Shown: positions 24,177-57,063 of the stretch, piece by piece
How positions within the stretch are numbered: the first letter of the stretch is position 1
How the letters are laid out: each line of letters opens with the position of its first letter
Source of the DNA: Ranitomeya imitator
Lineage: Eukaryota
Direction: 5' to 3'
DNA length: 64,000 nucleotides
NCBI RefSeq assembly: GCF_032444005.1
Contig: NC_091283.1
Coordinates: 843,572,001 to 843,636,000 of the forward strand
Translations under genes and position numbers: made by a program
The notes under the pieces: model-generated
What the model was told of the DNA's origin: nothing
The model's input: the letters and a program-made list of their open reading frames with translations, nothing else
Databases searched by the model: none

Positions 24177-25460
24177 CCCCTTCATGACCAGGGGATTTTT
24201 CGTTTTTCCGTGTTCGTTTTTCGCTCCCCTCCTTCCCAGAGCCATAACTTTTTTATTTTTCCGTCAATTTGGCCATGTGAGGGCTTATTTTTTGCGGGAC
24301 GAGTTGTACTTTTGAACGACATCATTGGTTTTAACATGTCGTGTACTAGAAAACGGGAAAAAAATTCCAAGTGCGGTGAAATTGCAAAAAAAGTGCAATC
24401 CCACATTGGTTTTTTGTTTGGCTTTTTTGCTAGGTTCACTAAATGCTAAAAATGACCTGCCATTATGATTCTCCAGGTCATTACGAGTTCATAGACACCA
24501 AACATGACTAGGTTATTTTTTATCTAAGTGGTGAAAAAAAATTCCAAACTTTGCTAAAAAAAAAAAAAAAAAAATTGCGCCATTTTCCGATACTCGTAGC
24601 GTCTCCATTTTTCGTTATCTGGGGTCGGTTGAGGGCTTATTTTTTGCGTGCCGAGATGACGTTTTTAATGATAGCATTTCGGTGCAGATACGTTCTTTTG
24701 ATCGCCCGTTATTGCATTTTAATGCAATGTCGCGGCGACCAAAAAAACGTAATTCTGGCGTTTCGAGTTTTTTTCCCGCTACGCTGTTTAGCGATCAGGT
24801 TAATACTTTTTTTTATTTGATAGATCGGGCAATTCTGAGCGCGGCGATACCAAATATGCGTAGATTTGATATTTTTTTTATTGATTTATTTTGATTGGGG
24901 CGAAAGGGGGGTGATTTAAACTTTTATGTTTTTTTTATTTTTTTCACATTTTTTTAAACTTTTTTTTTTAACTTTTGCCATGCTTCAATAGCCTCCATGA
25001 GAGGCTAGAAGCAGGCACAAGCCGATCGGCTCTGCTACATAGCAGCGATCTGCTGATCGCTGCTATGTAGCAGAATTGCACGTGTGCTGTGAGCGCCGAC
25101 CACAGGGTGGCGCTCACAGCGACGGGCAATCAGTAACCATAGAGGTCTCAAGGACCTCTATGGCTACAATGGAGACGCATCGCCGACCCCCGGACATGTG
25201 ACGGGGGTCGGCGATGACGTCATTTCCGGCCGCCCGGCCGGAAGCGGTAGTTAAATGCCGCTGTCTGCGTTTGACAGCGGCATTTAACTAGTTAATAGGT
25301 GCGGGCAGATCGCGATTCTGCCCGCGCCTATTACGGGCACATGTCAGCTGTTCAAAACAGCTGACATGTCCCGGCTTTGGTGCGGGCTCACCGCGGAGCC
25401 CTGCATCAAAGCAGGGGAGCCGGCATCGGACGGTATAGTACGTCCGATGCCGGTAAGGGG
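24177..25460. mobile_element. Non-autonomous piggyBac-like element
   Basis: TTAA-CCCCTT...AAGGGG-TTAA, TTAA duplication, no ORF, many internal hairpins. Confidence 0.85.
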
Positions 25461-37460: not shown

Positions 37461-38245
37461 CCCCTGCTACATAATTAAGATGTGTACTATCTTATACAGT
37501 ATTATACCCTGATATTAGCATGTTTTACCACACAATTGATGGTCTTGAATTTATTTCTATGTAGCTACATAGTGGGCACCAAGAATGATTTTCTCTGTAC
37601 AGATATATACCACGTATAGCAGTAATATGTGGGGGGTAACAGCTGTGGCGTTTACACCCTTCATATATCTTATGCTTGGTTACTTATGCTCAGGTTAACG
37701 TTCTTTCCATTTTTCGTGTTCTTTTCTCCAGAATCAGGACTTCTGCAGCAGACGATGACCTTTCTACATTTCTGTCAGTCACTGCAGCCGAACTTCTGCT
37801 GATTACCCACCGCCGGAGCCGCACGTGTTACTCCGGTAATTGTCTTGCACTTTCAAGAAAGTCTGTTATTTCGCTTCTTGCTTTGGATCCTCCGTCTGTC
37901 AGACCTATGGCTCCTAATCCCAGGACTTCATGAGCCGCGCTGGCAAACAGAATCTTTATAATTGGAAGAATATTCTCGTAGGAAATGATTCCGGATCTAA
38001 ACTATGGTACTTGATAACTGATTAAATAAAAATGACTAATCAAATGAGTAGAAAGGAGAATTGTAGAAACCGTGGAACTTTGTAGATACCTTCTTGACAC
38101 TTTTCCTAGTTTTGATGCAGGAAAAGAGAGAAGTCCAATGTGAATGCATCACTGCTCAGTCAGTAAAATTCAAAATTTAAGGGGCTTTTCCAGTTTTCTA
38201 AAATTATATATACATGCCGGTCTTTGTACAAAATCAGGGCCATAC

Positions 38246-38468
38246 CTGTCTATAGGTTGTGTCTGCTATTGCTGCTTTGTCCTCTGAGCTGCAGTACTCC
38301 AAACAACCTGTGGGAATGCTGTTGTGATGAGAAAGCTGTTTTCTCATTCTGCACAATCCCTTTAAACCATAGAGACGGATGTTAAATCTCCAGTTTGGGC
38401 CCCCTGCAGGAGTCTGAGCGATATCTGCAGAGTGGGAGGTGATGCGTCTCCAGGATATCGTCTCCCAC
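38246..38468 (-). CDS. Candidate 223-nt exon (WETISWRR...CLEYCSSEDKAAIADTTYRQ)
   Basis: One frame open between ttattattag| and CAG|gtatgg. Weak polypyrimidine tract; protein not recognised. Confidence 0.2.
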
Positions 38469-38944
38469 CTAATAATAAGCAGCCTCATTGTTATTTCCTA
38501 CAATTTGGGCTGATAATGGATCAGAGGTTACGACGCCGGTTTGCCAAATGTCTTTTGTAGCTCTATTTTTGCAAATCATAAAATGTCGTTTGTATTTTCA
38601 CTTTAAGAGATTTTTTAAATATTTTCTACAAAATCACCTTCAATTTACATCTCACCTTAGGTCCCTCAGGGGTTACAACTCTGTTTTGGTGTATTTCAGT
38701 GTTTTTTATGTGCTGCCCATAATTAGAGGCCGCTGGAAACTTTGTCTCTTGTTTGCATAAAACTCCACGAATGTTCCAGATGAAAGTATTTGCTCTGACA
38801 GGTGATTCCTCCTGGATTTGGATCCAGCTGTTTTTGCTGCTTTGTAGTTATTTGATGAATCTACATCTGATGAGAAAGTGTGATGCCCGAGATTAACTGG
38901 GAAAACACAGAAAAACAACATTCACGAATTTTCATCCGTTCTAG

Positions 38945-40070
38945 CAACTACTCATTAATTTATCAACTTCTCTGAACTTGCTCCAGTTTGTTGATGTCTT
39001 TTTTAAAATGTGCCCACAACTGGACACAGTATTCCAGATGAGGCCTAACCAAAGAGGAGTAGAGGGCAATAATGACTTCGTGTGATCTAGACTGTATGCT
39101 TCTGTTAATACATCCCAGAATTGTATTTTCTTTTTTTCCTGCTGCATCACACTGTTGACTCCTGTGCAGTCTGTGATCTATTAGTATACCCAAGTCTTTT
39201 TCACATGTGCTGTTGCTTAGCCCTATGCCGCCCATTCTGTATATGTTTTTTTCATTTTTATTGCCCAGATGTAGTACTTTGCATTTTTCCCTGTTAAAAA
39301 CCATTCTGTTAGTTGCTTCCCACTGCTCCAGTTTATTTATATCTTTTTGAATCCTCTCTTCTCTAATATGAGCAATCCCTCCTAGCTTTGTGTCATCAGC
39401 AAATTTAATCAGTGTACCCTCAATTCCTTCATCTAAATCATTGATAAAGATTTTGAACAATACAGGGCCCAGGACAGCACCCTGTGGTACCCCACTTGAG
39501 ACATTCTTCCAACTGGATGTGCAGCCATTTACGACCACTTCTTGCGTCCGATCACTAAGCCAGTTATGAATCTACCTAACAGTTGCCTTGTCCATTCCAT
39601 ACTTAGTCATTTTTTCAATAAGGATGGTGTGAGATACTTTGTCAAATGCTTTGCTGAAGTCAAGATATACTATATCAACAGCATTTCCCTGATCCACCAA
39701 GTCAGTGATTCTGTCGTAAAAGGAAGTTAAGTTAGTCTGACATGACTTATTAGTTACAAACTGATGCCAACTCTGGTTAATCACTTCATTCTTATCCAGG
39801 TACTTACTGTACATACATGTTGTTTAATAATTTGTTCAAAGATCTTTCCTGGTATAGAAGTCAGACTCACAGGCTTATAGTTCCCTGGGTCCACCTTCTT
39901 CCCTTTTTTGAAGATAGGAACAACATTTGCTCTTCTCCAGTCTTCTGGGACTTCTCCTGTTCACCAAGAATTTTCAAAGATTATGGAGAGTGGTTTGAAA
40001 ATTTCTTCTGCTATCTCCTTCAGTACTCTGGGGTGTCATTCATCTGGACCTGGAGACTTTAATTCATTTA
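38945..40070 (-). mobile_element. Older, diverged CR1 fragment (RT pseudogene)
   Basis: ORFs 38963-39538 and 39572-39814 with LDFSKAFD, GVPQGAVLGP, FADD, HLEYCVQLW. Frameshifted and clearly distinct from the young CR1 family. Confidence 0.9.
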
Positions 40071-40084
40071 TCATTGATCTAAAT

Positions 40085-40492
40085 GTTAGGCCCCGATAAA
40101 ATAATAAAGCCTATACTTCCCTCCCATGTGGGCACTCGCTCTCCCTAAGGCTTTCGTGCGGTGTTGTGACATGTGGTGCTTGACGCCCAATCAGTGCTGG
40201 CCTCACTGTTCCCGCATTCTGTCGAATTGAACATGAAGAGGAAGCTAGGGTTCATCTGATCTCCGACTTTCTCTTCATATTCTATTTGTCTGAAAGTGGA
40301 GATAGTGACGTCAGCACTTATTGGGCGCTGGATATTATGTGTCATGCAACAGCACGAGAGCCCTGGGACCGCGAGTGCCGAGACCGCTGGAACGGCGCCG
40401 GCATTGAAGGTGAGTGTAGGCTTTATTATTATATCAGGGCCAAGCATTTTGATCCAGATGGGGTTGTCCTAGCAGTGGACAACCCCTTTAAT
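40085..40492. mobile_element. Partial MITE ending GGACAACCCCTTTAA (Kolobok/T2-like terminus)
   Basis: Terminus resembles TTAA-AGGGGTTGTCC ends. Left end absent, next to the CR1 fragment. Confidence 0.4.
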
Positions 40493-41629
40493 ATGGCTAG
40501 CTTGCGCAATGAATGATAAGATGATACTTTTCTGTGCACTACTTATAAGCCCTTCTTCACAGCGGCCTACCGGAGGATTCTCCTGCTCTCCAGTGGGCCA
40601 GTCCAAGCATGAATATGGACACAGTTACATTTGAAGTTGAGACATAACTCCGATCTCCTGGGACAGGACTATCCCATTGGATCCTGGGTAATTGGGAAAT
40701 TTGCAGTTTCCTCTTTGCCATGGCCACTCCTTATTATCTGTGTCTGCCACTGACCAGGTGAGTGACTGTGTGACCACAAACGACTACATGTATCCTCCAT
40801 ATTGGCTGACAAGGCGATCTGGAGCACAAACTTCTTGTGTAACAGGTGAAATACTCTAAAGACTCTGAAGGACGGAGGCTCTTGTGTACGGCGAAGGTTT
40901 ATTACAAGGGGACAGAGTTGCGCTTTTATTATATATTGATACGTATCATTAAGCTTCTAATATTTTGTTCAGACACACAGAAAATATTACGTGATAATGA
41001 AAACGCGTCTCTCCATCCTCTTTGTCTTTATGTTACTTGTGAGATTTAATGACGGGTTGTCTCTATGCTGAATCCATCACTTCTGTCGACGGCGGTGGAT
41101 AATAATAATAGAGAAACATCTCATTGTGAAGAAATGAAGACGGACGACTTTTCGTGGAGAACGTGAAGGGTAAATAAATTCATTTATTTTATCTTTATTT
41201 CTATTATATTTAACATCTGAGTCATCCACATAAAAACGGTGAATATCAGACGGGGAAGATGAGTGCAATCAATATTTTACAATTCTTTTACTTCTCCTGG
41301 CGGACTTATACTTGGGCGAAATTGCTTCACTGAATCTTAAATAAAATGAATAAGAAAGTTTGTGATTTGTCTCCATAAAAAAACTACGTCCGTTTTATGT
41401 ATACAGCTCACATGCAGTTCAATATGTCTGTGTGGTTACAGGCTACAAATCAATCAGTGTGCACGGAGCCCCGTCAGCTCCTTACATTGCCACATGGCAC
41501 AGGGTACATGGATCCCACAACCATATCTGGTCTGAGCAGTGCAGTATTCTGCCCATAAAGTGCCAAAAAGTGCGAGGAAAGTGCAGTGTAATGCTAATAT
41601 AGTGCCGTATGGAGACTAACTGGCCTCAC

Positions 41630-41758
41630 CAGCTCGGTCTTATATTTGCAGATGTTTTCGGCACTGGCATATAATAACAGTAGAGTCATTTGCAGCCGTG
41701 GCCTCTGGTAAAAACACTTTACACTTCCCGGTTCTCTGCACACTGTGCCATTAATTAC
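41630..41758 (-). CDS. Candidate 129-nt phase 0/0 exon (VINGTVCREPGSVKCFYQRPRLQMTLLLLYASAENICKYKTEL)
   Basis: Acceptor ccctgtattatcag, donor CTG|gtgagg, open frame, length a multiple of 3. Protein not recognised. Confidence 0.3.
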
Positions 41759-41980
41759 CTGATAATACAGGGCATAAAACTGTAAATGGATGTAGAGACG
41801 CACAGACCACTGAAAAGACCTCCGAGACTGGAAGATGAGGCAGGAAGCAAAAGTAGACCAGTGTCTCTGCTATTGCAATCCAGGCCATGGCCTGAAGCCA
41901 CCAAAAGGGGGAGGAAAGGAGCTTAATGTATATACTGTATACACTGCACTCAAAAATAGCTTAGCAACCACTAATCTGCT

Positions 41981-44707
41981 GAGCTCCCCCTAGTGGTGGC
42001 TGCAGACAGAATCTTATCATGTATCTCTGTATACAGGGAGCTCCCCCTAGTGGTGGCTGCAGACAGAATCTTATCATGTATCTCTGTATACAGGGAGCTC
42101 CCCCTAGTGGTGGCTGCAGACAGGATCTTATCATGTATCTCTGTATACAGGGAGCTCCCCCTAGTGGTGGCTGCAGACAGGATCTTATCATGTATCTCTG
42201 TATACAGGGAGCTCCCCCTAGTGGTGGCTGCAGACAGGATCTTATCATGTATCTCTGTATACAGGGAGCTCCCCCTAGTGGTGGCTGCAGACAGGATCTT
42301 ATCATGTATCTCTGTATACAGGGAGCTCCCCCTAGTGGTGGCTGCAGACAGGATCTTATCATGTATCTCTGTATACAGGGAGCTCCCCCTAGTGGTGACT
42401 GCAGACAGAATCTTATCATGTATCTCTGTATACAGGGAGCTCCCCCTAGTGGTGGCTGCAGACAGGATCTTATCATGTATCTCTGTATACAGGGAGCTCC
42501 CCCTAGTGGTGACTGCAGACAGGATCTTATCATGTATCTCTGTATACAGGGAGCTCCCCCTAGTGGTGGCTGCAGACAGGATCTTATCATGTATCTCTGT
42601 ATACAGGGAGCTCCCCCTAGTGGTGACTGCAGACAGAATCTTATCATGTATGTCTGTATACAGGGAGCTCCCCCTAGTGGTGGCTGCAGACAGGATCTTA
42701 TCATGTATCTCTGTATACAGGGAGCTCCCCCTAGTGGTGACTGCAGACAGGATCTTATCATGTATCTCTGTATACAGGGAGCTCCCCCTAGTGGTGGCTG
42801 CAGACAGGATCTTATCATGTATCCCTGTATACAGGGAGCTCCCCCTAGTGGTGGCTGCAGACAGGATCTTATCATGTATCTCTGTATACAGGGAGCTCCT
42901 CCTAGTGGTGGCTGCAGACAGGATCTTATCATGTATCTCTGTATACAGGGAGCTCCCCCTAGTGGTGGCTGCAGACAGAATCTTACGTATCTCTGTATAC
43001 AGGGAGCTCCCCCTAGTGGTGGCTGCAGACAGGATCTTATCATGTATCTCTGTATACAGGGAGCTCCCCCTAGTGGTGACTGCAGACAGAATCTTATCAT
43101 GTATCTCTGTATACAGGGAGCTCCCCCTAGTGGTGTCTGCAGACAGGATCTTATCATGTATCTCTGTATACAGGGAGCTCCCCCTAGTGGTGTCTGCAGA
43201 CAGGATCTTATCATGTATCTCTGTATACAGGGAGCTCCCCCTAGTGGTGACTGCAGACAGAATCTTATCATGTATCTCTGTATACAGGGAGCTCTCCCTA
43301 GTGGTGGCTGCAGGCAGGATCTTATAATGTATCTCTGTATACAGGGAGCTCCCCCTAGTGGTGGCTGCAGACAGAATGTTATCATGTATCTCTGTATACA
43401 GGGAGCTCCCCCTAGTGGTGGCTGCAGACAGGATCTTATCATGTGTCTCTGTATACAGGGAGCTCCCCCTAGTGGTGACAGCAGACAGGATGTTATCATG
43501 TATCTCTGTATACAGGGTGCTCTCCCTAGTGGTGGCTGCAGACAGAATCTTATCATGTATCTCTGTATACAGGGAGCTCCCCCTAGTGGTGGCTGCAGAC
43601 AGAATCTTATCATGTATCTCTGTATACAGGGTGCTCCCCCTAGTGGTGACTGCAAACATAATCTTATCATGTATCTCTGTATATAGGGAGCTCCCCCTAG
43701 TGGTGACTGCAGACAGGATCTTATCATGTGTCTCTGTATACAGGGAGCTCCCCCTAGTGGTGGCTGCAGACAGGATCTTATCATGTATCTCTGTATACAG
43801 GGAGCTCCCCCTAGTGGTGGCTGCAGACAGGATCTAATCATGTATCTCTGTATACAGGGAGCTCCCTCTAGTGGTGGCTGCAGACAGGATCTTATCATGT
43901 ATCTCTGTATACAGGGAGCTCCCCCTAGTGGTGACTGCAGACAGGATCTTATGTATCTCTGCGTACAGGGAGCTCCCCCTAGTGGTGGCTGCAGACAGAA
44001 TGTTATCATGTATCTCTGTATACAGGGAGCTCCCCCTAGTGGTGGCTGCAGACAGGATCTTATGTATCTCTGCATACAGGGAGCTCCCCCTAGTGGTGGC
44101 TGCAGACAGAATGTTATCATGTATCTCTGTATACAGGGAGCTCCCCCTAGTGGTGGCTGCAGACAGGATCTTATGTATCTCTGCATACAGGGAGCTCCCC
44201 CTAGTGGTGGCTGCAGACAGAATGTTATCATATATCTCTGTATACAGGGAGCTCCCCCTAGTGGTGACTGCAGACAGGATCTTATGTATCTCTGCATACA
44301 GGGAGCTTCCCCTAGTGGTGGCTGCAGACAGAATGTTATCATGTATCTCTGTCTACAGGGAGCTCCCTATAGTGGTGGCTGCAGACAGGATCTTATCATG
44401 TATCTCTGTATACAGGGAGCTCCCCCTAGTGGTGACTGCAGACAGGATCTTATGTATCTCTGCATACAGGGAGCTCCCCCTAGTGGTGGCTGCAGACAGG
44501 ATCTTATCATGTATCTCTGTATACAGGGAGCTCCCCCTAGTGGTGGCTGCAGGCAGAATCTTATCATGTATCTCTGTATACAGGGAGCTGCCCCTAGTGG
44601 TGACTGCAGACAGGATCTTATCATGTATCTCTGTATACAGGGAGCTCCCCCTAGTGGTAACTGCAGACAGGATGTTATCATGTATCTCTGTATACAGGGA
44701 GCTCCCC
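41981..44707. repeat. 57-bp minisatellite with CTCF-like motif, left block (about 48 units)
   Basis: Unit GAGCTCCCCCTAGTGGTGGCTGCAGACAGGATCTTATCATGTATCTCTGTATACAGG; some 54-bp variants. Confidence 0.98.
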
Positions 44708-47700
44708 TGTTATGTTTGCTAATGACAGGTGTTATGAAGGCAATCCAGAAACACAGTGTGCATAGCGATCAGAGCGCACACAGTGATCTGACAAATACCC
44801 AAAAATACAAGAACGAGCTCTGAGACGTGGAAACTCTGTAGACTGCACACCTGATCCTATACTAAACACAACTAAAAGCGGCTGTGGATTGCGCCTAACA
44901 ACTACCTAGGCAACTCGGCACAGCCTAAGAAACTAGCTAGCCTGAAGATAGAAAAATAGGCCTGACTTGCCCCAGAGAAATTCCCCAAAGGAAAAGGCAG
45001 CCCCCCACATATAATGACTGTGAGTAAGATGAAAAGACAAAACGTAGGGATGAAATAGATTCAGCAAAGTGGGGCCCGATATTCTAGGACAGAGCGAGGA
45101 CAGTAAAGCGAACTTTGCAGTCTACAAAAAACCCTAAAGCAAAACCACGCAAAGGGGGCAAAAAAAACCCACCGTGCCGAACTAACGGCACGGCGGTACA
45201 CCCTTTGCGTCTCAGAGCTTCCAGCAAAACAAAAGACAAGCTGGACAGAAAAAAAGCAACAAAAAAGCAAAAAGCACTTAGCTATACAGAGCAGCAGGTC
45301 ACAGGAACAATCAGGAGAAGCTCAGATCCAACACTGAAACATTGACAAGGAGCAAGGATAGCAGCATCAGGCGGAGTTAAGTAATGAAGCAGTTAACGAG
45401 CTCACCAGAACACCTGAGGGAGGAAGCTCAGAAGCTGCAGTACCACTTGTGACCACAGGAGTGAATTCAGCCACAGAATTCACAACAGTACCCCCCCCTT
45501 GAGGAGGGGTCACCGAACCCTCACCAGAGCCCCCAGGCCGACCAGGATGAGCCGCATGAAAGGCACGAACAAGATCGGAAGCATGAACATCAGAGGCAAA
45601 AACCCAGGAATTATCTTCCTGAGCATAACCCTTCCATTTAACCAGATACTGGAGTTTCCGTCTAGAAACACGAGAATCCAAAATCTTCTCCACAATATAC
45701 TCCAATTCCCCCTCCACCAAAACCGGGGCAGGAGGCTCAACAGATGGAACCATAGGTGCCACGTATCTCCGCAACAACGACCTATGGAATACATTATGTA
45801 TGGAAAAGGAGTCTGGGAGGGTCAAACGAAAAGACACAGGATTGAGAACCTCAGAAATCCTATACGGACCAATAAAACGAGGTTTAAATTTAGGAGAGGA
45901 AACCTTCATAGGAATATGACGAGAAGATAACCAAACCAGATCCCCAACACGAAGTCGGGGACCCACACGGCGTCTGCGATTAGCGAAAAGTTGAGCTTTC
46001 TCCTGGGACAAGATCAAATTGTCCACTACCTGAGTCCAGATCTGCTGCAACCTATCCACCACAGAATCCACACCAGGACAGTCCGAAGACTCAACCTGTC
46101 CTGAAGAGAAACGAGGATGGAACCCAGAATTGCAAAAAAATGGAGAAACCAAGGTAGCCGAGCTGGCCCGATTATTAAGGGCGAACTCAGCCAACGGCAA
46201 AAAGGACACCCAATCATCCTGGTCTGCAGAAACAAAACATCTCAGATATGTTTCCAAGGTCTGATTGGTTCGTTCGGTCTGGCCATTAGTCTGAGGATGG
46301 AAAGCCGAGGAAAAGGATAGGTCAATGCCCATCCTACCACAAAAGGCTCGCCAAAACCTTGAAACAAACTGGGAACCTCTGTCAGAAACAATATTCTCAG
46401 GAATGCCATGCAACCGAACCACATGCTGAAAGAACAAAGGTACCAAATCAGAGGAGGAAGGCAATTTAGCCAAGGGCACCAGATGGACCATTTTAGAAAA
46501 GCGATCACAGACCACCCAAATGACTGACAACTTTTGAGAAACGGGAAGGTCAGAAATGAAATCCATCGAAATATGTGTCCAAGGCCTCTTTGGGACCGGC
46601 AAGGGCAAAAGCAACCCACTGGCACGAGAACAGCAGGGCTTAGCCCTAGCACAAATCCCACAGGACTGCACAAAAGTACGTACATCCCGTGACAGAGATG
46701 GCCACCAGAAGGATCTAGCCACTAACTCTCTGTTACCAAAGATTCCAGGATGACCAGCCAACACCGAACAATGAACCTCAGAGATAACTTTATTAGTCCA
46801 CCTATCAGGGACGAACAGTTTCTCTGCTGGACAACGATCAGGTTTATTCGCCTGAAATTTTTGCAGCACCCGCCGCAAATCAGGGGAGATGGCAGACACA
46901 ATGACTCCTTCCTTGAGGATACCCGCTGGCTCAGATAAACCCGGAGAGTCGGGCACAAAACTCCTAGACAGAGCATCCGCCTTCACATTTTTAGAGCCCG
47001 GAAGGTACGAAATCACAAAGTCGAAGCGGGCAAAAAATAACGACCAACGGGCCTGTCTAGGATTCAAGCGCTTGGCAGACTCGAGATAAGTCAAGTTCTT
47101 ATGATCAGTCAATACCACCACGCGATGCTTAGCTCCTTCAAGCCAATGACGCCACTCCTCGAATGCCCACTTCATGGCCAGCAACTCTCGATTGCCCACA
47201 TCATAATTACGCTCAGCGAGCGAAAACTTCCTGGAAAAGAAAGCACATGGTTTCATCACTGAGCAATCAGAACCTCTCTGTGACAAAACCGCCCCTGCTC
47301 CAATCTCAGAAGCATCAACCTCGACCTGGAACGGAAGAGAAACATCTGGCTGACACAACACAGGGGCAGAACAAAAACGACGCTTCAACTCCTGAAAAGC
47401 TTCCACAGCAGCAGAAGACCAATTAACCAAATCAGCACCCTTCTTGGTCAAATCGGTCAATGGTTTGGCAATGCTAGAAAAATTACAGATGAAGCGACGA
47501 TAAAAATTAGCAAAGCCCAGGAACTTTTGCAGACTTTTCAGAGATGTCGGCTGAATCCAATCCTGGATGGCTTGGACCTTAACTGGATCCATCTCGATAG
47601 TAGAAGGGGTAAAGATGAACCCCAAAAATGAAACTTTCTGCACACCGAAGAGACACTTTGATCCCTTCACAAACAAAGAGTTAGCACGCAGGACCTGAAA

Positions 47701-50462
47701 AACCATTCTGACCTGCTTCACATGAGACTCCCAATCATCTGAGAAGATCAAAATGTCATCCAAGTAAACAATCAGGAATTTATCCAGATACTCACGGAAG
47801 ATGTCATGCATAAAAGACTGAAACACAGATGGAGCATTGGCAAGTCCGAACGGCATCACTAGATACTCAAAATGACCCTCGGGCGTATTGAATGCAGTTT
47901 TCCATTCATCTCCTTGCCTGATTCTCACCAGATTATACGCACCACGAAGATCTATCTTAGTGAACCAACTAGCCCCCTTAATCCGAGCAAACAAGTCAGA
48001 TAACAATGGCAAGGGATACTGAAATTTAACAGTGATCTTATTAAGAAGGCGGTAATCAATACACGGTCTCAGCGAACCATCCTTCTTGGCTACAAAGAAG
48101 AACCCTGCTCCCTGTGGTGATGACGATGGGCGAATATGTCCCTTCTCCAGGGATTCCTTCACATAACTGCGCATAGCGGCGTGTTCGGGCACGGATAAAT
48201 TAAATAATCGACCTTTAGGGAATTTACTACCAGGAATCAAATTGATAGCACAATCACAATCCCTATGCGGAGGTAGAGCATCGGACTTGGGCTCTTCAAA
48301 TACATCCTGATAATCAGACAAGAACTCTGGGACCTCAGAAGGGGTGGATGACGAAATAGACAAAAATGGAACATCACCATGTACCCCCTGACAACCCCAG
48401 CTGGATACCGACATGGAATTCCAATCCAATACTGGATTATGGGTTTGTAGCCATGGCAACCCCAACACGACCACATCATGCAGATTATGCAACACCAGAA
48501 AGCGAATAACTTCCTGATGTGCAGGAGCCATGCACATGGTCAGCTGGGCCCAGTATTGAGGTTTATTCTTGGCCAAAGGTGTAGCATCAATTCCTCTCAA
48601 TGGAATAGGACACCGCAAAGGCTCCAAGAAAAACCCACAACGTTTAGCATAATCCAAATCCATCAGATTCAGGGCAGCGCCCGAATCCACAAACGCCATG
48701 ACAGAAAACGACGACAAAGAGCATATCAAGGTAATGGACAGAAGGAATTTGGACTGTACAGTACCAATGACGGCAGACCTAGCGGACCGCTTAGTGCGCT
48801 TAGGACAATCAGAAATAGCATGAGTGGAATCACCACAGTAGAAACACAGACCATTCAGACGTCTGTATTCCTGCCGTTCAACTCTAGTCATAGTCCTATC
48901 GCACTGCATAGGCTCAGGTTTAACCTCAGGCAGTACCGCCAAATGGTGGACAGATTTACGCTCGCGCAAGCGTCGACCGATCTGAATGGCCAAAGACAAA
49001 GACTCATTCAAACCAGCAGGCATAGGAAATCCCACCATGACATCCTTAAGAGCCTCAGAGAGACCCTTTCTGAACAAAGCTGCCAGCGCAGATTCATTCC
49101 ACTGAGTGAGTACTGACCATTTCCTAAATTTCTGACAATATACTTCTATATCATCCTGACCCTGGCACAAAGCCAGCAAATTTTTCTCAGCCTGATCCAC
49201 TGAATTAGGCTCATCGTACAGCAATCCGAGCGCCAGGAAAAACGCATCGACACTACTCAATGCAGGGTCTCCTGGCGCAAGAGAAAATGCCCAGTCTTGA
49301 GGGTCGCCGCGCAAAAAAGAAATAATAATCAAAACCTGTTGAATAGGATTACCAGAAGAATGAGGTTTCAAGGCCAGAAATAGCTTACAATTATTTTTGA
49401 AACTTAGAAACTTAGTTCTATCTCCAAAAAACAAATCAGGAATAGGAATTCTTGGTTCTAACATAGATTTCTGATCAATAGTATCTTGAATTTTTTGTAC
49501 ATTTATAACGAGATTATCCATTGAAGAGCACAGACCCTGAATATCCATGTCCACACCTGTGTCCAGAATCACCCAAATGTCTAGGGGAAAAAAAAAAAAG
49601 TGAACACAGAGCAGAAAAAAAAAAATGATGTCAGAACTTTTTCTTTCCCTCTATTGAGAATCATTAGTTTGGCTCCTTGTACTGTTATGTTTGCTAATGA
49701 CAGGTGTTATGAAGGCAATCCAGAAACACAGTGTGCATAGCGATCAGAGCGCACACAGTGATCTGACAAATACCCAAAAATACAAGAACGAGCTCTGAGA
49801 CGTGGAAACTCTGTAGACTGCACACCTGATCCTATCCTAAACACAACTAAAAGCGGCTGTGGATTGCGCCTAACAACTACCTAGGCAACTCGGCACAGCC
49901 TAAGAAACTAGCTAGCCTGAAGATAGAAAAATAGGCCTGACTTGCCCCAGAGAAATTCCCCAAAGGAAAAGGCAGCCCCCCACATATAATGACTGTGAGT
50001 AAGATGAAAAGACAAAACGTAGGGATGAAATAGATTCAGCAAAGTGGGGCCCGATATTCTAGGACAGAGCGAGGACAGTAAAGCGAACTTTGCAGTCTAC
50101 AAAAAACCCTAAAGCAAAACCACGCAAAGGGGGCAAAAAAAACCCACCGTGCCGAACTAACGGCACGGCGGTACACCCTTTGCGTCTCAGAGCTTCCAGC
50201 AAAACAAAAGACAAGCTGGACAGAAAAAAAGCAACAAAAAAGCAAAAAGCACTTAGCTATACAGAGCAGCAGGTCACAGGAACAATCAGGAGAAGCTCAG
50301 ATCCATCACTGAAACATTGACAAGGAGCAAGGATAGCAGCATCAGGCGGAGTTAAGTAATGAAGCAGTTAACGAGCTCACCAGAACACCTGAGGGAGGAA
50401 GCTCAGAAGCTGCAGTACCACTTGTGACCACAGGAGTGAATTCAGCCACAGAATTCACAACA
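44708..50462 (-). mobile_element. Intact Tf1/sushi-group chromoviral Gypsy element B
   Basis: 780-bp LTRs 44708-45487 and 49683-50462 (TG...CA; 2 differences seen). PPT AAGGGGGGGG. CTCCCC on both flanks. Confidence 0.98.
45367..49572 (-). CDS. Single Gag-Pol polyprotein, 1401 aa (Gag-CCHC-protease-RT-RNase H-integrase-chromodomain)
   Basis: CFYCGDSTHAISDC, VDSGA, YLDD, DASEIGAGAVL, H-H-C-C zinc site and ISMDFI...IVSDRG...GQTERTN integrase, EYIVEKILDSR...YLVKWKGY chromodomain. Stop codon lies inside the 3' LTR. Confidence 0.97.
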   Translation of the reverse strand: MILDTGVDMDIQGLCSSMDNLVINVQKIQDTIDQKSMLEPRIPIPDLFFGDRTKFLSFKNNCKLFLALKPHSSGNPIQQVLIIISFLRGDPQDWAFSLAPGDPALSSVDAFFLALGLLYDEPNSVDQAEKNLLALCQGQDDIEVYCQKFRKWSVLTQWNESALAALFRKGLSEALKDVMVGFPMPAGLNESLSLAIQIGRRLRERKSVHHLAVLPEVKPEPMQCDRTMTRVERQEYRRLNGLCFYCGDSTHAISDCPKRTKRSARSAVIGTVQSKFLLSITLICSLSSFSVMAFVDSGAALNLMDLDYAKRCGFFLEPLRCPIPLRGIDATPLAKNKPQYWAQLTMCMAPAHQEVIRFLVLHNLHDVVVLGLPWLQTHNPVLDWNSMSVSSWGCQGVHGDVPFLSISSSTPSEVPEFLSDYQDVFEEPKSDALPPHRDCDCAINLIPGSKFPKGRLFNLSVPEHAAMRSYVKESLEKGHIRPSSSPQGAGFFFVAKKDGSLRPCIDYRLLNKITVKFQYPLPLLSDLFARIKGASWFTKIDLRGAYNLVRIRQGDEWKTAFNTPEGHFEYLVMPFGLANAPSVFQSFMHDIFREYLDKFLIVYLDDILIFSDDWESHVKQVRMVFQVLRANSLFVKGSKCLFGVQKVSFLGFIFTPSTIEMDPVKVQAIQDWIQPTSLKSLQKFLGFANFYRRFICNFSSIAKPLTDLTKKGADLVNWSSAAVEAFQELKRRFCSAPVLCQPDVSLPFQVEVDASEIGAGAVLSQRGSDCSVMKPCAFFSRKFSLAERNYDVGNRELLAMKWAFEEWRHWLEGAKHRVVVLTDHKNLTYLESAKRLNPRQARWSLFFARFDFVISYLPGSKNVKADALSRSFVPDSPGLSEPAGILKEGVIVSAISPDLRRVLQKFQANKPDRCPAEKLFVPDRWTNKVISEVHCSVLAGHPGIFGNRELVARSFWWPSLSRDVRTFVQSCGICARAKPCCSRASGLLLPLPVPKRPWTHISMDFISDLPVSQKLSVIWVVCDRFSKMVHLVPLAKLPSSSDLVPLFFQHVVRLHGIPENIVSDRGSQFVSRFWRAFCGRMGIDLSFSSAFHPQTNGQTERTNQTLETYLRCFVSADQDDWVSFLPLAEFALNNRASSATLVSPFFCNSGFHPRFSSGQVESSDCPGVDSVVDRLQQIWTQVVDNLILSQEKAQLFANRRRRVGPRLRVGDLVWLSSRHIPMKVSSPKFKPRFIGPYRISEVLNPVSFRLTLPDSFSIHNVFHRSLLRRYVAPMVPSVEPPAPVLVEGELEYIVEKILDSRVSRRKLQYLVKWKGYAQEDNSWVFASDVHASDLVRAFHAAHPGRPGGSGEGSVTPPQGGGTVVNSVAEFTPVVTSGTAASELPPSGVLVSSLTASLLNSA

Positions 50463-52504
50463 CTCCCCCTAGTGGTGGCTGCAGACATGATCTTATCATG
50501 TATCTCTGTATACAGGGAGCTCCCCCTAGTGGTGGCTGCAGACAGGATCTTATCATGTATCTATGTATACAGGGAGCTCCCCCTAGTGGTGGCTGCAGAC
50601 AGGATCTTATCATGTATCTCTGTATACAGAGAGCTCCCCCTAGTGGTGGCTGCAGACAGGATCTTATCATGTACCTCTGTATACAGGGAGCTCCCCCTAG
50701 TGGTGGCTGCAGACAGGATCTTATCATGTACCTCTGTATACAGGGAGCTCCCTCTAGTGGTGGCTGCAGACAGGATCTTATCATGTATCTCTGTATACAG
50801 GGAGCTCCCCCTAGTGGTGGCTGCAGACAGGATCTTATCATGTACCTCTGTATACAGGGAGCTCCCCCTAGTGGTGGCTGCAGACAGGATCTTATCATGT
50901 ACCTCTGTATACAGGGAGCTCCCTCTAGTGGTGGCTGCAGACAGGATCTTATCATGTATCTCTGTATACAGGGAGCTCCCCCTAGTGGTGGCTGCAGACA
51001 GGATCTTATCATGTACCTCTGTATACAGGGAGCTCCCCCTAGTGGTGGCTGCAGACAGGATCTTATCATGTATCTCTGTATACAGGGAGCTCCCCCTAGT
51101 GGTGGCTGCTGACAGGATCTTATCATGTATCTCTGTATACAGGGAGCTCCCCCTAGTGGTGGCTGCAGACAGGATCTTATCATGTACCTCTGTATACAGG
51201 GAGCTCCCCCTAGTGGTGGCTGCAGACAGAATCTTATCATGTATCTCTGTATACAGGGAGCTCCCCCTAGTGGTGGCTGCAGACAGGATCTTATCATGTA
51301 TCTCTGTATACAGGGAGCTCCCCCTAGTGGTGACTGCAGACAGGATCTTATCATGTACCTCTGTATACAGGGAGCTCCCCCTAGTGGTGTCTGCAGACAG
51401 GACCTTATCATGTATCTCTGTATACAGGGAGCTCCCCCTAGTGGTGGCTGCAGACAGGATCTTATCATGTATCTCTGTATACAGGGAGCTCCCCCTAGTG
51501 GTGACTGCAGACAGGATCTTATCATGTATCTCTGCATACAGGGAGCTCCCCCTAGTGGTGGCTGCAGACAGGATCTTATCATGTATCTCTGTATACAGGG
51601 AGCTCCCCCTAGTGGTGGCTGCTGACAGGATCTTATCATGTATCTCTGTATACAGGGAGCTCCCTATAGTGGTGGCTGCAGACAGCATATTATCATGTAT
51701 CTCTGTCTACAGGAAGCTCCCCCTAGTGGTGGCTGCAGACAGGATCTTATCATGTATCTCTGTATACAGGGAGCTCCTCCTAGTGGTGGCTGCAGACAGG
51801 ATCTTATCATGTATCTCTGTATACAGGGAGCTCCCCCTAGTGGTGACTGCAGACAGGATCTTATCATGTATCTCTGCATACAGGGAGCTCCCCCTAGTGG
51901 TGGCTGCAGACAGGATCTTATCATGTATCTCTGTATACAGGGAGCTCCCCCTAGTGGTGGCTGCTGACAGGATCTTATCATGTATCTCTGTATACAGGGA
52001 GCTCCCTATAGTGGTGGCTGCAGACAGCATATTATCATGTATCTCTGTCTACAGGAAGCTCCCCCTAGTGGTTACTGCAGACAGGATCATATCATGTATC
52101 TCTGTCTACAGGAAGCTCCCCCTAGTGGTGGCTGCAGACAGGATCTTATCATGTATCTCTGTATACAGGGAGCTCCCCCTAGTGGTGGCTGCAGACAGGA
52201 TCTTATCATGTATCTCTGTACACAGGGAGCTCCCCCTAGTGGTGACTGCAGACAGGATCATATCATGTATCTCTGTATACAGGGAGCTCCCCCTAGTGGT
52301 GGCTGCAGACAGGATCTTATCATGTATCTCTGTATACAGGGAGCTCCCCCTAGTGGTGGCTGCAGACAGGATCTTATCATGTATCTCTGTATACAGGGAG
52401 CTCCCCCTAGTGGTGGCTGCAGACAGGATCTTATCATGTATCTCTGTATACAGGGAGCTCCCCCTAGTGGTGGCTGCAGACAGAATTGTATCATGTATCT
52501 CTGT
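50463..52504. repeat. 57-bp CTCF-motif minisatellite, right block (about 36 units)
   Basis: Same unit, resumes in register after element B. Confidence 0.98.
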
Positions 52505-54334
52505 CCATAAGGAGCTGTTCATCTGTATTTCTCCTCAGATGTTTGTCTTTGGTGCTTGGTGCCATCAGCGACACCAGCGCCAACTACCTGATCATTTCAG
52601 CGCTAAGCTGATGATAAGTGTTAAAAATTAAAAAAAAAATTAGAATAAAAAACATTTACATGGAAATCATAAGGAATAATTCAGATGCACATAGTATAGT
52701 GAGAAGAAAATAATTATTATGGGAAAAAGCATAAAAACAAAAACGAAGCAATTATGAGTCTCGAGGGAAATATAAAAAGGTCAGATGTTTTTTCGGCTGT
52801 GTTCCTACCTCGCTGTGCACCCACCACTGACTTTTTATCCTTAATGGACGCTGTGTCTCGTGTGCCGCGGTGAGCTGCGGTTTCCACGTTCTCGTAAACT
52901 GTGTGCTCAGCCCGATCTTGTTCCCCAGCCCGGCTTATTAAGGCGGCATAATCCTCCAAGCACTAATTATTCCCGATGGATTTTCAGCTTTGGGTCTTTC
53001 TATTGCCAGAAAATAGTCAATGAGCAGTCATTAATTGCAGATGTGAATGCCGGAAAGCTTTGCTGGGCTTTTACAATGCTCCTTGACACCGCGACGTGAG
53101 GTCGGGTGGTAATTATATGAGTATTGACCCTCGAACACCGAGACATAAAAAGCCGTCTATCGACCTGTGCACATTATGGTGTCACTACGGGGAAGGGTGC
53201 AGCAGTGATTAACGGGGTTTCTAATGGCTCCTGATTGCTGCGCTGCGATTCCTGATGGTAGACTATAGGCGGACCGGACGCCACAATCACCGTCTGCTCG
53301 CTTGTATTTATTTTATTTGTAGCGTGTAGTAAATAGTTTTCAGGTCCGTAAAAAAACTGAAAAAGTCTTGACGCCCTGCCCTGTAGGCGCGCACTATTAC
53401 CTGCACGCAACCTCTGTAGCTATCGCTGCACGCACAGGACGGATCCGTAATCTCACAGGTTATTACTAATGAAGGCGAATTTATTCTAAACTGACCAAAT
53501 TTGCCATTTTTAATATTTTGATCCTCCGGCTGTCATGGATTCTTTCTCCAACCGGCTCCTCTTCCGTCTTCTCCTTGTTGCCACCTCTGGCTGGCGGAGT
53601 AGAGGTGAATATAAGAGTTTGTTTTATTTTATAACCCTTTCCTGGCAGATTTGATTGGCATTAAATCTATCTGTTGTGAATTGAATCCCCCCCAAAGTGA
53701 ACAAATCTGCCCAAATCGAATTTCAGGATATTCTCTTAATTCCGGTTGCTACTGAGTGGCACCGTATGTAATAGATGGCACTGACTGCTGCCTAATAGTG
53801 GGGTCTGATGAGCATTGGGACCCTCTGCTGTGACAGACCCCCCTACAAATCCTCAATAGGGTCACTTTGTGTAAGAATAACAACTGAGTCTTCTTTACCC
53901 CCGTCCAACCACGCTGCTGCCTCCAGTCCTTGTGGTCATGGCTGCGGTGGTGACATTGTGGCTGCAGCATGTGACCACTGCAGCCAATCACTGGGCTCTG
54001 CCATGTACTTGGGCATCGCCGGTGAGCTTAGTGATTGGCTGTAGTGGTCACATGCTGTAGGGTTAATATCACTGTTAAAAGGTGCAATAAATTTGTTGCA
54101 CCAGGATTTGAAAATTTAAGGGTCATTTCCAAAATCACAATGCCATCCTATAATAATGTACAGATATAAATATTCAGTTATGTCAATATAATTCATTTTT
54201 AAATCTTTCATTTTGAAAATATCACCCCTAAAAGAAGCCACTCCAGGCTCTATTTAGCCTCTAGCGGCCATTACAATGTACTGCTGTAGTTCCAGCTGCG
54301 GGTTCATTCTGCTCAGCTCCTTGTCTTTCACTTT

Positions 54335-54530
54335 CATGCTGCTATCAGGGTCGGACTGGCCCACCGGGATACTGGTGAAATGGCCGGTGGGCCCCGACCC
54401 AGAGAGGAGGAGGAGGAAGAAAAAAAAAAAGAGACGTGGGCCCTTTAAATCTTCGGGCGGCGGCGACCGCCGCCACGACCAGGGCCCTCCCCCCGGTGCC
54501 AGCGCTGTCATTGGGACCCCCTTCTAATAC
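54335..54530. mobile_element. Fragment of a GC-rich hAT-like MITE
   Basis: Starts CAGGGTCGGACTGGCCCACCGG...CCGGTGGGCCCC. No matching right end identified. Confidence 0.35.
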
Positions 54531-55375
54531 TCACCTCTCCTGGTTCCTGCGGCAGCTGCAGCGTCTTCAGCGCCCTCTGACTCTTTGACGTCTCAGGGCA
54601 GAGGGTGCGATGACGTCACCATAACTCTGCTGTGCCTCCACCACTGACATAGAGTGTGAAACTCTGCTCTGTGCACTGTCTGCTCCTATACAGAACCCTG
54701 CCTGCCTCATTTTGTCTTATGCCATGTACATCAGTAAAGCCGCAGTGCGGATTTACATAATTGTTAGCTGGTTTCTAGCAAAGGTCAATTCCCCTGCACT
54801 ATTCCAAAACAGAGATTGTTATTACCAGGCAGTGTAGAGCTGTGATTGTTGCTAGCTGCTATCAGATCAGTGATGTAAAACTTAAAAAGTTGCTCTTTTT
54901 GATGCATGTAACAGATGACTATCTTCTGCTGTATGCATCAGCAGAGCTTCCTCTGCAGATTCACATCACTGATCTGTCAGCAGGAGCCAACAAACTCAGC
55001 TCTGCGCTGCCTAACAATTACAAGCTCCATTGTGGAGGAGTGCTGGATAGTTGAGCTCTGCTATAACCGATTAATGATGTAAAACCACATTGCAGGTACA
55101 GTGATGTTGATGACAGAATGCAGAGCTTTGTTCAGGAGAAGATATTGCACAGAAGCATAAGGTGAATTATACACTTAATGGGGAGATGGGGCTAGTCAGG
55201 AACAGACAGGAGAGGGGGAAGGATCTGCAGCACTGAGGAGAAGCAAAGTGCTGCTGCAAAATGAAGTTTTAGCAGATAACTTTAGGATTGTCCATTCTGC
55301 TATGTGAAGCTGGAGACACAGATTGAGATGACAAAATACACAAATGTTCAGGAAGGAAACTTTATGCTGAGCTTA

Positions 55376-56134
55376 GGCTGGTTTCACATTTGCATTTAAA
55401 AACGCAGCGTTTTAAACGCAAACGCATGTGGTGAAAAACGCATGTTTTGACGTGTTTACATGCATTTACATGCGTTTTTTCCTGCGTTTGCGTTTTTAAA
55501 ACGCATGATGAGAAGTGTCTGACAGCTGCCAATCATCAAAATCAACAAGAAAACCCACTTTAAACAGAAATAGCTAGGGTTAGGGTTAGGGTTAGGATCC
55601 CTAGTAACCCTAGGGATCCTAACCCTAACCTTAACCCTATCCCTAACCCTAACCCTAAGGGATCCTAACCCTAACCCTAACCCTAAGGGATCCTAACCCT
55701 AACCCTAAGGGATCCTAACCCTAACCCTAAGGGAACCCTAACCCTAAGTGAACCCTAACCCTAAGGGATCCTAACCCTAACCCTTAGGGTTAGGGTTAGG
55801 ATCCCTTAGGGTTAGGGTTGGGGTTAGGGTTTGGGGTTGGCTTATTAGTGTGTATTCTTGTGTTTTTCTATTAAAAAGCATTCCTTTAAAAACACATACA
55901 AATGCATGTGCTTAAAAACGCATGCGCTTACATAGACAGCAATAGGTTTTTTTGTGGCAAAAAAACGCCGCTACAAATTACTACATGTTGCATTTCTGCA
56001 ACACAACGCATGCATAGAAAAGACGCATGCGGCGGCAAAACGCGGCAAAACGCATGCAAAAAAATGCATGCGTTTTTAATGTTAAGTATAGGAAAAAAAA
56101 CGCAGCGGCAAAAAACGCAAATGTGAAACCAGCT
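55376..56134. mobile_element. PIF/Harbinger-type MITE carrying telomere-like repeats
   Basis: TTA-GGCTGGTTTCACATTTGC...GCAAATGTGAAACCAGCT-TTA; AAAACGCATG subterminal repeats. Confidence 0.88.
55575..55840. repeat. Interstitial TTAGGG/CCCTAA array in both orientations, punctuated by GGATCC
   Basis: Directly visible; main unit GGATCCTAACCCTAACCCTAAG. Confidence 0.95.
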
Positions 56135-57063
56135 TTAGTCTGTGTATTAACAACTAGTCTGCATAGGCTCGGCTTTGAGAAAAATAATGTGAGATTCATT
56201 ATCTTGTACTCTAGCCTTGATGCTCTAAGTTTACACCACATTTCTCTTGCAATTTACACAAATTTGCAGGAAACAATGCAAAAAATGCCAAAAGTTTCAA
56301 AAGTTTTGTTTAACTACATGTTGCATAAAACTTTTTTTTACATTTGCAACAGTTTTACTACAGTTTTCTAGTGCAAACTGTTTGATAAATGGGGCGCATT
56401 TTCTTAAGATTTTTGCTATAATTGACAGTAATTTTACATAAATCATAGTAACTCGGCCGGGCTGTGATTGATCTTCCATCTGCCCCTCAGCCACTTCTAC
56501 ATTTTTAAAACTATGGGGAGTCTGGTGCAAAATTGAAAATAGTTGCAAACTTTTTGCAGAATGTTAGAATTGTTTTACCCCAATTATATCACTTCTCATT
56601 GTGCACAGATCACCTCCATTCGACTACCCCCTAGAGGCAGGTGTGTATACTTATGCAAATCTTTATATTGTTCGGTTAATGGAATCTAATACTTGTGACT
56701 TCTTTTCTTGTTCTTTTATTATTTATAGTATTTTATTATTATATTATATTACTAGTTACATAATAAATTACTGAATATCCAAACAAAAACAAGAAAAGGG
56801 GCGTGAATACTTTTATCAAGTTAGTTACTTTAGGTACTTATTGTAAATCAGACAGTTGACTTATTTTTATATAATTTATGCATCTGAGAACATAAAATCT
56901 GCAACAAAAAAAAGAATAAGATAAAGAATGTTAGCAGGGTGACAACCAGTAAAACGCATCCGCCCCAAGTCCTCCTCTTGGAATCACCTCTTATTATTAG
57001 CTACAATATATTATGGCGGATCATCTCCTGTCTTAAAGAGTTTGTCTATTCTTCTTTCTTCAG

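What the first reader, a model, noticed from the sequence alone, without database searches (positions are those of the whole stretch)
41981..52504. About 80 co-oriented, CpG-free CTCF-consensus motifs in a 57-bp minisatellite
Seen: every unit contains GAGCTCCCCCTAGTGG, which is CCACTAGGGGGAGCTC on the minus strand. This matches 12 of 14 core positions of the canonical CTCF motif CCACCAGGGGGCGC; the T is a common variant and the A is a minor one. About 48 plus 36 units, all in one orientation; the consensus unit has no CpG. The variant CCACTAGAGGGAGC still fits the motif. Established: CTCF motif orientation determines cohesin loop anchoring, and tandem CTCF arrays such as DXZ4 and Firre form strong boundaries and long-range contacts. 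Inference: a mobile or expanding minisatellite could act as a methylation-insensitive, directional, copy-number-tunable insulator cassette, or as a CTCF sink. I do not know of such a system being described in frogs. Binding cannot be shown from sequence, and 57-bp spacing would limit simultaneous occupancy.
Basis: partly seen in the sequence, partly recalled or inferred. Interest (0 to 1): 0.75.

Follow-up and report, generated by a model that had tools for sequence, protein, structure and literature searches.

The report
Frog satellite block carrying CTCF-like motifs
The 84 same-direction CTCF-type motifs are real, but they belong to one block of a very abundant 57-base frog satellite, cut in two by a young jumping gene, and nothing here shows it was built as an insulator or binds CTCF.

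Summary
Positions 41981-44707 and 50463-52504 are one 57-bp tandem array of 84 units. An intact Ty3/gypsy chromovirus (44708-50462, minus strand, 780-bp LTRs 99.7% identical, 6-bp target duplication) splits it.

79 of 84 units pass p<1e-5, all on the minus strand. The array has 2 CpG in 4763 bp.

The motif belongs to a satellite family, not to this locus. In contigs from four coded organisms the unit's word depth is 10^3 to 10^6, against 2.6-4.1 for the unique flank. That implies roughly 10^4 to several 10^5 units per genome. One other organism also has the array at the same left junction.

Inside this array, motif positions vary as much as the rest of the unit. Motif-damaging variants were copied along by local 2-, 3- and 6-unit duplications.

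This scan has already noted the same 57-bp CTCF-like satellite on other DNA of this genome (for example s1-307380 and s1-288401).

The best reading is an ordinary satellite block grown by unequal exchange. CTCF binding, insulation or a CTCF-sink effect at family level are possible but untested. I found no paper describing this satellite.

The parts
41892..41943 (.). Degenerate edge unit on the left flank. The motif-bearing segment is inverted (41892-41913) and is followed by the rest of a unit in direct orientation (41914-41943).
   Evidence: Local alignments to the unit score 29 (minus strand) and 32 (plus strand). The maximum over 300 shuffles was 27. A + strand PWM hit of 12.95 bits lies at 41898. 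In one search this edge has 2-8 times the single-copy depth in organism B.
41981..44707 (-). Left part of the 57-bp satellite array, 49 unit starts. The CTCF-type motif lies on the minus strand of every unit. A consensus-identical unit is window:42152-42208.
44702..44707 (.). Target-site duplication CTCCCC, left copy. The right copy is at 50463-50468.
   Evidence: Sequence read. Removing the element plus one copy restores the 57-bp register across the joint.
44708..50462 (-). Intact Ty3/gypsy chromovirus-type LTR retrotransposon inserted into the array. Its LTRs are 44708-45487 and 49683-50462, with TG..CA ends.
   Evidence: The LTRs are 780 bp and 99.7% identical. A second, degraded copy of the family (about 85% identical) lies at 32101-36746.
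45367..49572 (-). Single 1401-aa Gag-Pol ORF of the inserted element.
   Evidence: Pfam matches: Retrotrans_gag, RVT_1 (2.6e-37), RT_RNaseH, Integrase_H2C2, rve, SH3_Tf2-1 and Chromo (5.9e-13).
50463..52504 (-). Right part of the same array, 35 units. A decayed last unit runs on to about 52517.
52751..53750 (.). Context only: a CpG-rich, island-like stretch just right of the array. A similar one lies at 40751-41500 on the left.
   Evidence: CpG observed/expected is 0.9-1.07, against a window mean of 0.43.
25097..25115 (+). Context only: the best CTCF PWM hit outside the array (17.9 bits). It sits in a strong CpG island and is convergent with the array's minus-strand motifs.

Best explanation
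This is one 4.8-kb block (84 units) of a very abundant 57-bp satellite DNA family. The scan's own unchecked notes say the genome is a poison frog.

Shown:
- Every unit carries a strong CTCF-type motif in one orientation. That feature belongs to the family consensus and is inherited by every array. It is not something assembled at this locus.
- The block carries 2-, 3- and 6-unit higher-order duplications.
- It already existed at this site before the split from at least one related organism.
- A Ty3/gypsy chromovirus inserted into it recently, which is why it looks like two arrays.

Inferred:
- The block grew and is homogenised by unequal exchange or replication slippage, in DNA that is dense with minisatellites and transposons.
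- Its motif evolves without detectable constraint here.
- Most units are packed in silent, nucleosomal chromatin, so few if any are occupied by CTCF.
- The array has no selected, locus-specific insulator role.
For: One array in register after removing the element; 6-bp target duplication; LTRs 99.7% identical.

Family abundance and spread: word depth in array bins is 10^3 to 10^6, against 2.6 (X3) and 4.1 (X4) in the unique flank. 5837 contigs were laid in X4. Integrated over the array bins, this gives about 2e4 (X3) to 6e5 (X4) units. Similarity breaks cluster at fixed unit phases, and there are opposite-strand joins.

Orthologous junction: a 1566-nt contig of organism B covers 41600-42005 at about 96% identity and runs into the first unit.

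No constraint inside the array: variable columns are 9 of 19 in the motif against 22 of 38 elsewhere (p 0.3-0.4). The motif-damaging TA variant was copied within a 6-unit duplication, in units 69 and 75. One diverged contig in organism B has 8 of its 14 listed changes inside the motif.

Surroundings: about ten other minisatellites, plus CR1, Tc1 and gypsy elements, in the same 64 kb.

Chromatin hint: both copies of the chromodomain-bearing gypsy family in the window sit inside minisatellites.
Against: The motif match is very strong (p about 1e-7; 9 of 200,000 unit shuffles) and lacks the CpG through which methylation blocks CTCF.

At family level the motif half looks like the better-conserved half. 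The best-supported breaks of similarity fall at unit phases 21, 24 and 45. Common variants shared by the four organisms fall at phases 18, 25, 26, 29, 42 and 43, outside the informative motif positions. This is not significant (about p 0.1).

The commonest in-motif variant, G to A at matrix position 11, is one the matrix tolerates.

CpG-rich, island-like DNA flanks the array on both sides.

The chromatin state is inferred only from one element family's insertion sites.
Confidence: 0.6

Rival explanations
1. The units do bind CTCF in at least some cell types. Each array would then act as a multi-site, one-directional barrier to cohesin loop extrusion. With minus-strand motifs it would anchor loops towards lower coordinates, for example to the + strand site in the CpG island at 25097. 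The family would be a satellite-borne wave of CTCF sites, comparable to SINE B2 in rodents.
For: 20.1-bit match; 79 of 84 units at p<1e-5; strict co-orientation; no CpG. CTCF, its motif orientation rule and cohesin dependence hold in X. tropicalis (PMC8270788). The motif half appears to be the conserved half among subfamilies. A convergent partner and CpG-rich flanks lie nearby.
Against: There is no binding data. Motif columns are not less variable in this array, and damaged units persist and are duplicated. The 57-bp spacing leaves no room for nucleosomes between occupied sites. From general knowledge, mammalian cells are reported to hold about 10^5 CTCF molecules, so 10^4-10^5 or more such sites could not all be filled. 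A chromovirus inserted inside the array.
Confidence: 0.25
2. The satellite acts at family level rather than locally. It could be a sink that titrates CTCF or its paralogue. Alternatively the conserved block could be bound by a different protein, for example a repeat-silencing zinc-finger protein, that nucleates heterochromatin.
For: Very high copy number in several organisms. A conserved roughly 37-nt block (unit phase 45 to 24) surrounds the motif. Chromovirus insertions lie in these arrays.
Against: Purely inferential; no protein or chromatin data. Nothing in the sequence points to another known motif. Rfam finds no RNA family in the region.
Confidence: 0.1
3. The motif match is a chance resemblance in a repeat with C and G runs, noticed because many repeats were inspected. 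It would have no biological meaning.
For: 0.2% of shuffles of the unit's letters reach p<1e-5. A genome holds many repeat families, and readers look for CTCF. No constraint was detected in the array.
Against: Only 9 of 200,000 shuffles reach the observed score. None of the other roughly ten minisatellites in the window has a hit. The scan's unchecked notes report CTCF-like motifs in several differently sized repeats of this genome.
Confidence: 0.05

Closest known systems
Dispersed satellite or minisatellite families of frog genomes, e.g. the recombination-associated subtelomeric tandem repeats of X. tropicalis (PMC10794172)
   Same: Short unit, head-to-tail arrays of kilobases at many loci. 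Expansion is attributed to unequal recombination. Arrays are embedded in repeat-dense DNA and shared by related species.
   Different: The unit sequence is unrelated to any frog satellite I could find. Each unit carries a strong CTCF-type motif. The chromosomal position of this window is unknown.
CTCF-binding macrosatellites DXZ4, FIRRE, ICCE and D4Z4 (PMC3491370, PMC6125249, PMC6985041, PMC2639723)
   Same: Tandem repeats with one CTCF motif per unit in a single orientation. They are proposed or shown to be strong anchors or boundaries.
   Different: Those have kilobase-scale units, sit at single loci, and have experimentally shown, epigenetically regulated CTCF binding. Here the unit is 57 bp, the family has about 10^4-10^5 or more units at many loci, and no binding data exist.
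Transposon-borne CTCF motif expansions (rodent SINE B2; PMC7156512, PMC10982698)
   Same: A CTCF motif in a repeat consensus is multiplied to very high copy number in one lineage, with potential to remodel looping and a need for the host to restrain binding.
   Different: B2 spreads by retrotransposition as single copies. Here multiplication is by tandem amplification, and the means of spread to new loci is unknown. I found no terminal repeats or transposon hallmarks around this array.
Ty3/gypsy chromoviruses (for the inserted element)
   Same: LTRs with TG..CA ends, a short target duplication, gag-RT-RNaseH-integrase order and a C-terminal chromodomain.
   Different: Nothing unusual was seen. 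The primer-binding site was not identified.

Membership tests
Satellite / minisatellite DNA family | Head-to-tail tandem units of uniform length and high identity | tested here: met
   57-bp period, 94-95% matches, 84 units.
Satellite / minisatellite DNA family | High copy number and presence at many loci | tested here: met
   Array word depth 10^3-10^6 against 2.6-4.1 in the flank; thousands of contigs with different continuations. The tool warns that depth is not an exact copy number.
Satellite / minisatellite DNA family | Evolution by unequal exchange (higher-order repeats, locally shared variants) | tested here: met
   2-, 3- and 6-unit higher-order patterns. Mean unit distance is lowest at lags 2 and 6.
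CTCF-bound tandem arrays (DXZ4/FIRRE class) | A CTCF motif in each unit, co-oriented | tested here: met
   79 of 84 units at p<1e-5, all on the minus strand.
CTCF-bound tandem arrays (DXZ4/FIRRE class) | CTCF occupancy in vivo | not testable with these tools
   No ChIP or footprint data were within reach. The runs laid were contigs only.
CTCF-bound tandem arrays (DXZ4/FIRRE class) | Boundary or long-range contacts in Hi-C | not testable with these tools
   No contact maps were available.
CTCF-bound tandem arrays (DXZ4/FIRRE class) | Kilobase-scale unit at one locus or a few loci | tested here: not met
   The unit is 57 bp and the family is genome-wide.
Transposon-borne CTCF site (SINE B2-like) | The motif is part of a mobile element with recognisable ends or an insertion signature | tested here: inconclusive
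   No inverted or direct terminal repeats between the flanks 37981-41980 and 52505-56504. However, there is an inverted degenerate unit at the left edge, and opposite-strand joins exist in other genomes.
Ty3/gypsy chromovirus (the insertion) | Paired LTRs, target duplication, gag-pol domains with a chromodomain | tested here: met

The most novel reading that the evidence does not exclude
A poison-frog lineage has amplified a 57-bp satellite to about 10^5 strong, CpG-free, co-oriented CTCF motifs, and a real fraction of them is bound. Satellite arrays, rather than single sites or SINEs, would then supply directional loop-extrusion barriers whose strength depends on copy number, or would buffer the free CTCF pool. 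Array gain and loss would rewire 3D genome folding between related species.
Probability: 0.2. Interest if true: 0.8.

Novelty: new member of a known kind. Interest (0 to 1): 0.4.

Why it matters
At this locus the finding is ordinary: a satellite block with a transposon in it.

At family level it is worth one experiment. I found no published description of this satellite or of a CTCF-motif satellite in frogs.

If CTCF binds, these arrays would be a natural copy-number series, from a few units to hundreds, for asking how barrier strength scales with the number of tandem sites. They would also show how a genome tolerates about 10^5 extra high-affinity sites.

If CTCF does not bind, the family is a clean example of how chromatin hides perfect motifs.

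Tried and rejected
- Terminal inverted or direct repeats around the array (4 kb each side): none. No evidence that this array sits inside a transposon.
- Other copies of the unit elsewhere in the window: none beyond chance 10-12-mers.
- Rfam on 41000-53500: no RNA family.
- CTCF hits in the other minisatellites of the window: none.
- Constraint on motif columns within the array: not detected. Power is low, because variants spread by duplication rather than arising independently.
- CpG-freeness as a special feature: rejected. At the window's CpG observed/expected of 0.43, a 57-bp unit of this composition is expected to hold about 1.5 CpG, so zero is unremarkable. The array-wide absence only repeats the unit.
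I repeated it on 41600-42500 as the tool advised.
- Findings look-up by sequence: blank.
- Literature searches for the unit's core as text, for frog satellitomes, and for CTCF with frog repeats: no description found.
- The species was not checked independently. 'Poison frog' comes from the scan's own notes.
- The primer-binding site of the inserted element was not identified.
- The exon-like stretch at 53535-53600 was not verified.
Full report
**1. What is in the sequence**

Tandem Repeats Finder reports two 57-bp arrays, 41981-44707 and 50463-52504, with 94-95% matches.

The 5.8 kb between the arrays is not spacer. It is an LTR retrotransposon on the minus strand.
- It has two 780-bp LTRs, 44708-45487 and 49683-50462, with TG..CA ends, 99.7% identical.
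- It is flanked by a 6-bp target duplication, CTCCCC, at 44702-44707 and 50463-50468.
- It holds a single uninterrupted 1401-aa ORF (45367-49572, minus strand). Pfam finds gag, reverse transcriptase, RNase H, integrase and a C-terminal chromodomain, so it is a Ty3/gypsy chromovirus.

With the element and one copy of the duplication removed, all unit starts are 57 or 54 bp apart, including across the joint. There is therefore one array of 84 units (4763 bp): 77 units of 57 bp, 6 of 54 bp, and a truncated last unit that decays to about 52517.

**2. The motif**

I scored the sequence with the JASPAR MA0139.1 count matrix. Its column sums (908-913) and its consensus are as expected.
- The consensus unit (for example window:42152-42208) contains one site on the minus strand, CCACCACTAGGGGGAGCTC. 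It scores 20.1 bits of a possible 27.7, with an exact p of about 1e-7.
- 79 of 84 units pass p<1e-5 and 4 more pass p<1e-4, all on the minus strand.
- The rest of the 64 kb holds 7 hits at p<1e-5. None lies in the roughly ten other minisatellites of the window.
- Shuffling the unit's own letters reaches the observed score 9 times in 200,000.
- The array holds 2 CpG and the consensus none.

The CpG-free point is true but weak. At the window's CpG observed/expected of 0.43, a unit of this composition is expected to carry only about 1.5 CpG.

**3. It is a genome-wide satellite**

- The unique flank has word depth 2.6 (X3, same organism as the window) and 4.1 (X4, organism B). Array bins reach 10^3 to 10^6.
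- Integrating the array bins and dividing by flank depth gives about 2e4 units (X3, a small data set) and about 6e5 units (X4). The tool warns that depth is not a copy number, so these are orders of magnitude only.
- X4 alone gave 5837 contigs, 1811 of them at least 99% like the window.
- A 1566-nt contig of organism B covers the unique left flank, 41600-42005, at about 96% identity and runs into the first unit. The array therefore sat at this very site before the two organisms diverged.
- The best-supported breaks of similarity fall at fixed unit phases: just after phases 21 and 24, and just before phase 45. The letters that follow are diverged or shortened versions of the other half of the unit. 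The family thus has subfamilies that share the block from phase 45 to phase 24, which contains the motif, and differ in the A+T-richer half.
- Joins between opposite strands also occur.

In the window itself the left edge carries a degenerate unit. Its motif segment is inverted (41892-41913) and the remainder is direct (41914-41943). The alignment scores of 29 and 32 exceed all 300 shuffles.

The scan's own notes, unchecked by me apart from the depth estimate, describe the same 57-bp CTCF-like satellite on other pieces of this genome. They call it a poison frog and estimate 100,000-800,000 units.

**4. Is the motif under constraint?**

Within the array it is not.
- Variable columns number 9 of 19 in the matrix footprint, 3 of 8 at high-information positions, and 22 of 38 elsewhere (Mann-Whitney p 0.30 and 0.40).
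- The variant map shows local 2-unit (units 34-43), 3-unit (51-57) and 6-unit (66-77) higher-order repeats, the signature of unequal exchange.
- The motif-damaging TA variant (10.6 bits) was duplicated with its neighbours, in units 69 and 75.
- A diverged contig of organism B has 8 of its 14 listed changes inside the footprint.

Some evidence leans the other way.
- Common variants shared across the four organisms lie at phases 18, 25, 26, 29, 42 and 43, outside the informative positions (roughly p 0.1).
- The subfamily structure keeps the motif half.
- The commonest in-motif variant is one the matrix tolerates.

The net result is no demonstrated constraint, with a weak family-level lean towards conservation of the motif half.

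**5. Context**

The window is dominated by repeats: CR1 LINEs, Tc1-type transposase remnants, two gypsy copies, a Gag-only LTR element and many minisatellites.

The second copy of the same gypsy family (32101-36746, LTRs 98.7% identical, broken ORFs) is also inserted in a minisatellite with a 6-bp duplication, GGGTGG. From general knowledge, integrase chromodomains of chromoviruses are reported to steer integration to H3K9-methylated chromatin. Two of two insertions in tandem arrays is therefore a weak hint that these arrays are silent chromatin in the germ line.

CpG-rich, island-like DNA lies on both sides of the array, at 40751-41500 and 52751-53750. A strong CpG island at 24251-25500 holds a + strand CTCF hit (25097, 17.9 bits) convergent with the array.

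**6. Mechanism**

Shown:
- A satellite block with tandem amplification and higher-order duplications.
- A recent chromovirus insertion.
- A strong, co-oriented, CpG-free CTCF-type motif in every unit, as a family property.

Established elsewhere: in X. tropicalis, CTCF motifs are convergent at TAD borders, and CTCF and Rad21 are needed for TADs (PMC8270788). The vertebrate matrix is therefore applicable to frogs.

Inferred:
- Sites 57 bp apart cannot be separated by nucleosomes. An array is either a nucleosome-free carpet of CTCF or nucleosomal with most motifs hidden.
- With 10^4-10^5 or more units per genome, the second state must hold for most of the family.
- My best reading (0.6) is therefore a neutrally evolving satellite block without a locus-specific insulator role.
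- Partial CTCF occupancy with directional barrier activity (0.25) remains open. If it were real, loops and stripes should point to lower coordinates.
- A family-level sink, or binding by another protein (0.1), also remains open.

**7. Comparison and novelty**

The array resembles DXZ4, FIRRE and ICCE in having one co-oriented CTCF motif per tandem unit. It fails their other features (kilobase units, one locus) and lacks their defining evidence of binding (PMC3491370, PMC6125249, PMC6985041).

It resembles SINE B2 in multiplying a CTCF motif to very high copy number (PMC7156512, PMC10982698), but it does so by tandem amplification.

It fits the general picture of recombination-driven tandem-repeat expansion in frog genomes (PMC10794172).

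I found no paper that describes this satellite, its core sequence, or a CTCF-motif satellite in frogs. It is best filed as a new member of a known kind, satellite DNA, with an untested and potentially interesting property.

This locus adds three things to what the scan already noted for the family:
- the transposon split of the array;
- the orthologous junction in a second organism;
- the negative within-array constraint test.

Noticed in passing
window 32101-36746 and 44708-50462: Both copies of one Ty3/gypsy chromovirus family in the window are inserted inside minisatellites, with 6-bp target duplications in C/G runs (GGGTGG and CTCCCC). This may reflect targeting to tandem repeats or silent chromatin. 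Copy A is intact (1401-aa ORF). Copy B has an internal deletion of about 1.1 kb and broken ORFs.
   Followed up: partly
window 41892-41943: The left edge of the array holds a degenerate unit whose motif-bearing segment is inverted relative to the rest. Opposite-strand joins of the satellite also occur in contigs of other organisms. This may be a clue to a fold-back or hairpin progenitor.
   Followed up: partly
window 52751-53750 and 40751-41500: CpG-rich, island-like stretches (observed/expected 0.9-1.07, against a window mean of 0.43) flank the array. 53535-53600 on the + strand reads like a first exon encoding a signal peptide, ending at a GT donor. No transcript evidence was obtained.
   Followed up: no
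window 24251-25500: A strong CpG island (observed/expected up to 1.87) contains the best non-satellite CTCF matrix hit of the window (25097, + strand, 17.9 bits).
   Followed up: no
window 887-3225: A 21-bp minisatellite of about 112 copies (94% matches) with an unusually high CpG content (observed/expected about 1.0). It is one of about ten unrelated minisatellites in this window; others are at 10643-11919, 25968-26862, 30616-31238 and 36747-37453.
   Followed up: no
window 55540-55840: A block of interstitial telomere-like repeats (CCCTAA/TTAGGG) in both orientations, interleaved with GGATCC. It lies inside what looks like a transposon with long inverted ends, roughly 55370-56140.
   Followed up: no
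window 28468-28905 (minus strand): An ORF with a ZCCHC3-type RNA-binding domain and CCHC zinc knuckles, in a G+C-richer stretch (28-31 kb). It may be a host or a domesticated gene.
   Followed up: no
window 43916-44500 (units 34-43): A 54-bp unit variant (3-bp deletion plus T to C) alternates with 57-bp units as a 111-bp higher-order repeat. A 54-bp satellite with a CTCF motif is noted elsewhere in this genome by the scan (s1-307459).
   Followed up: partly
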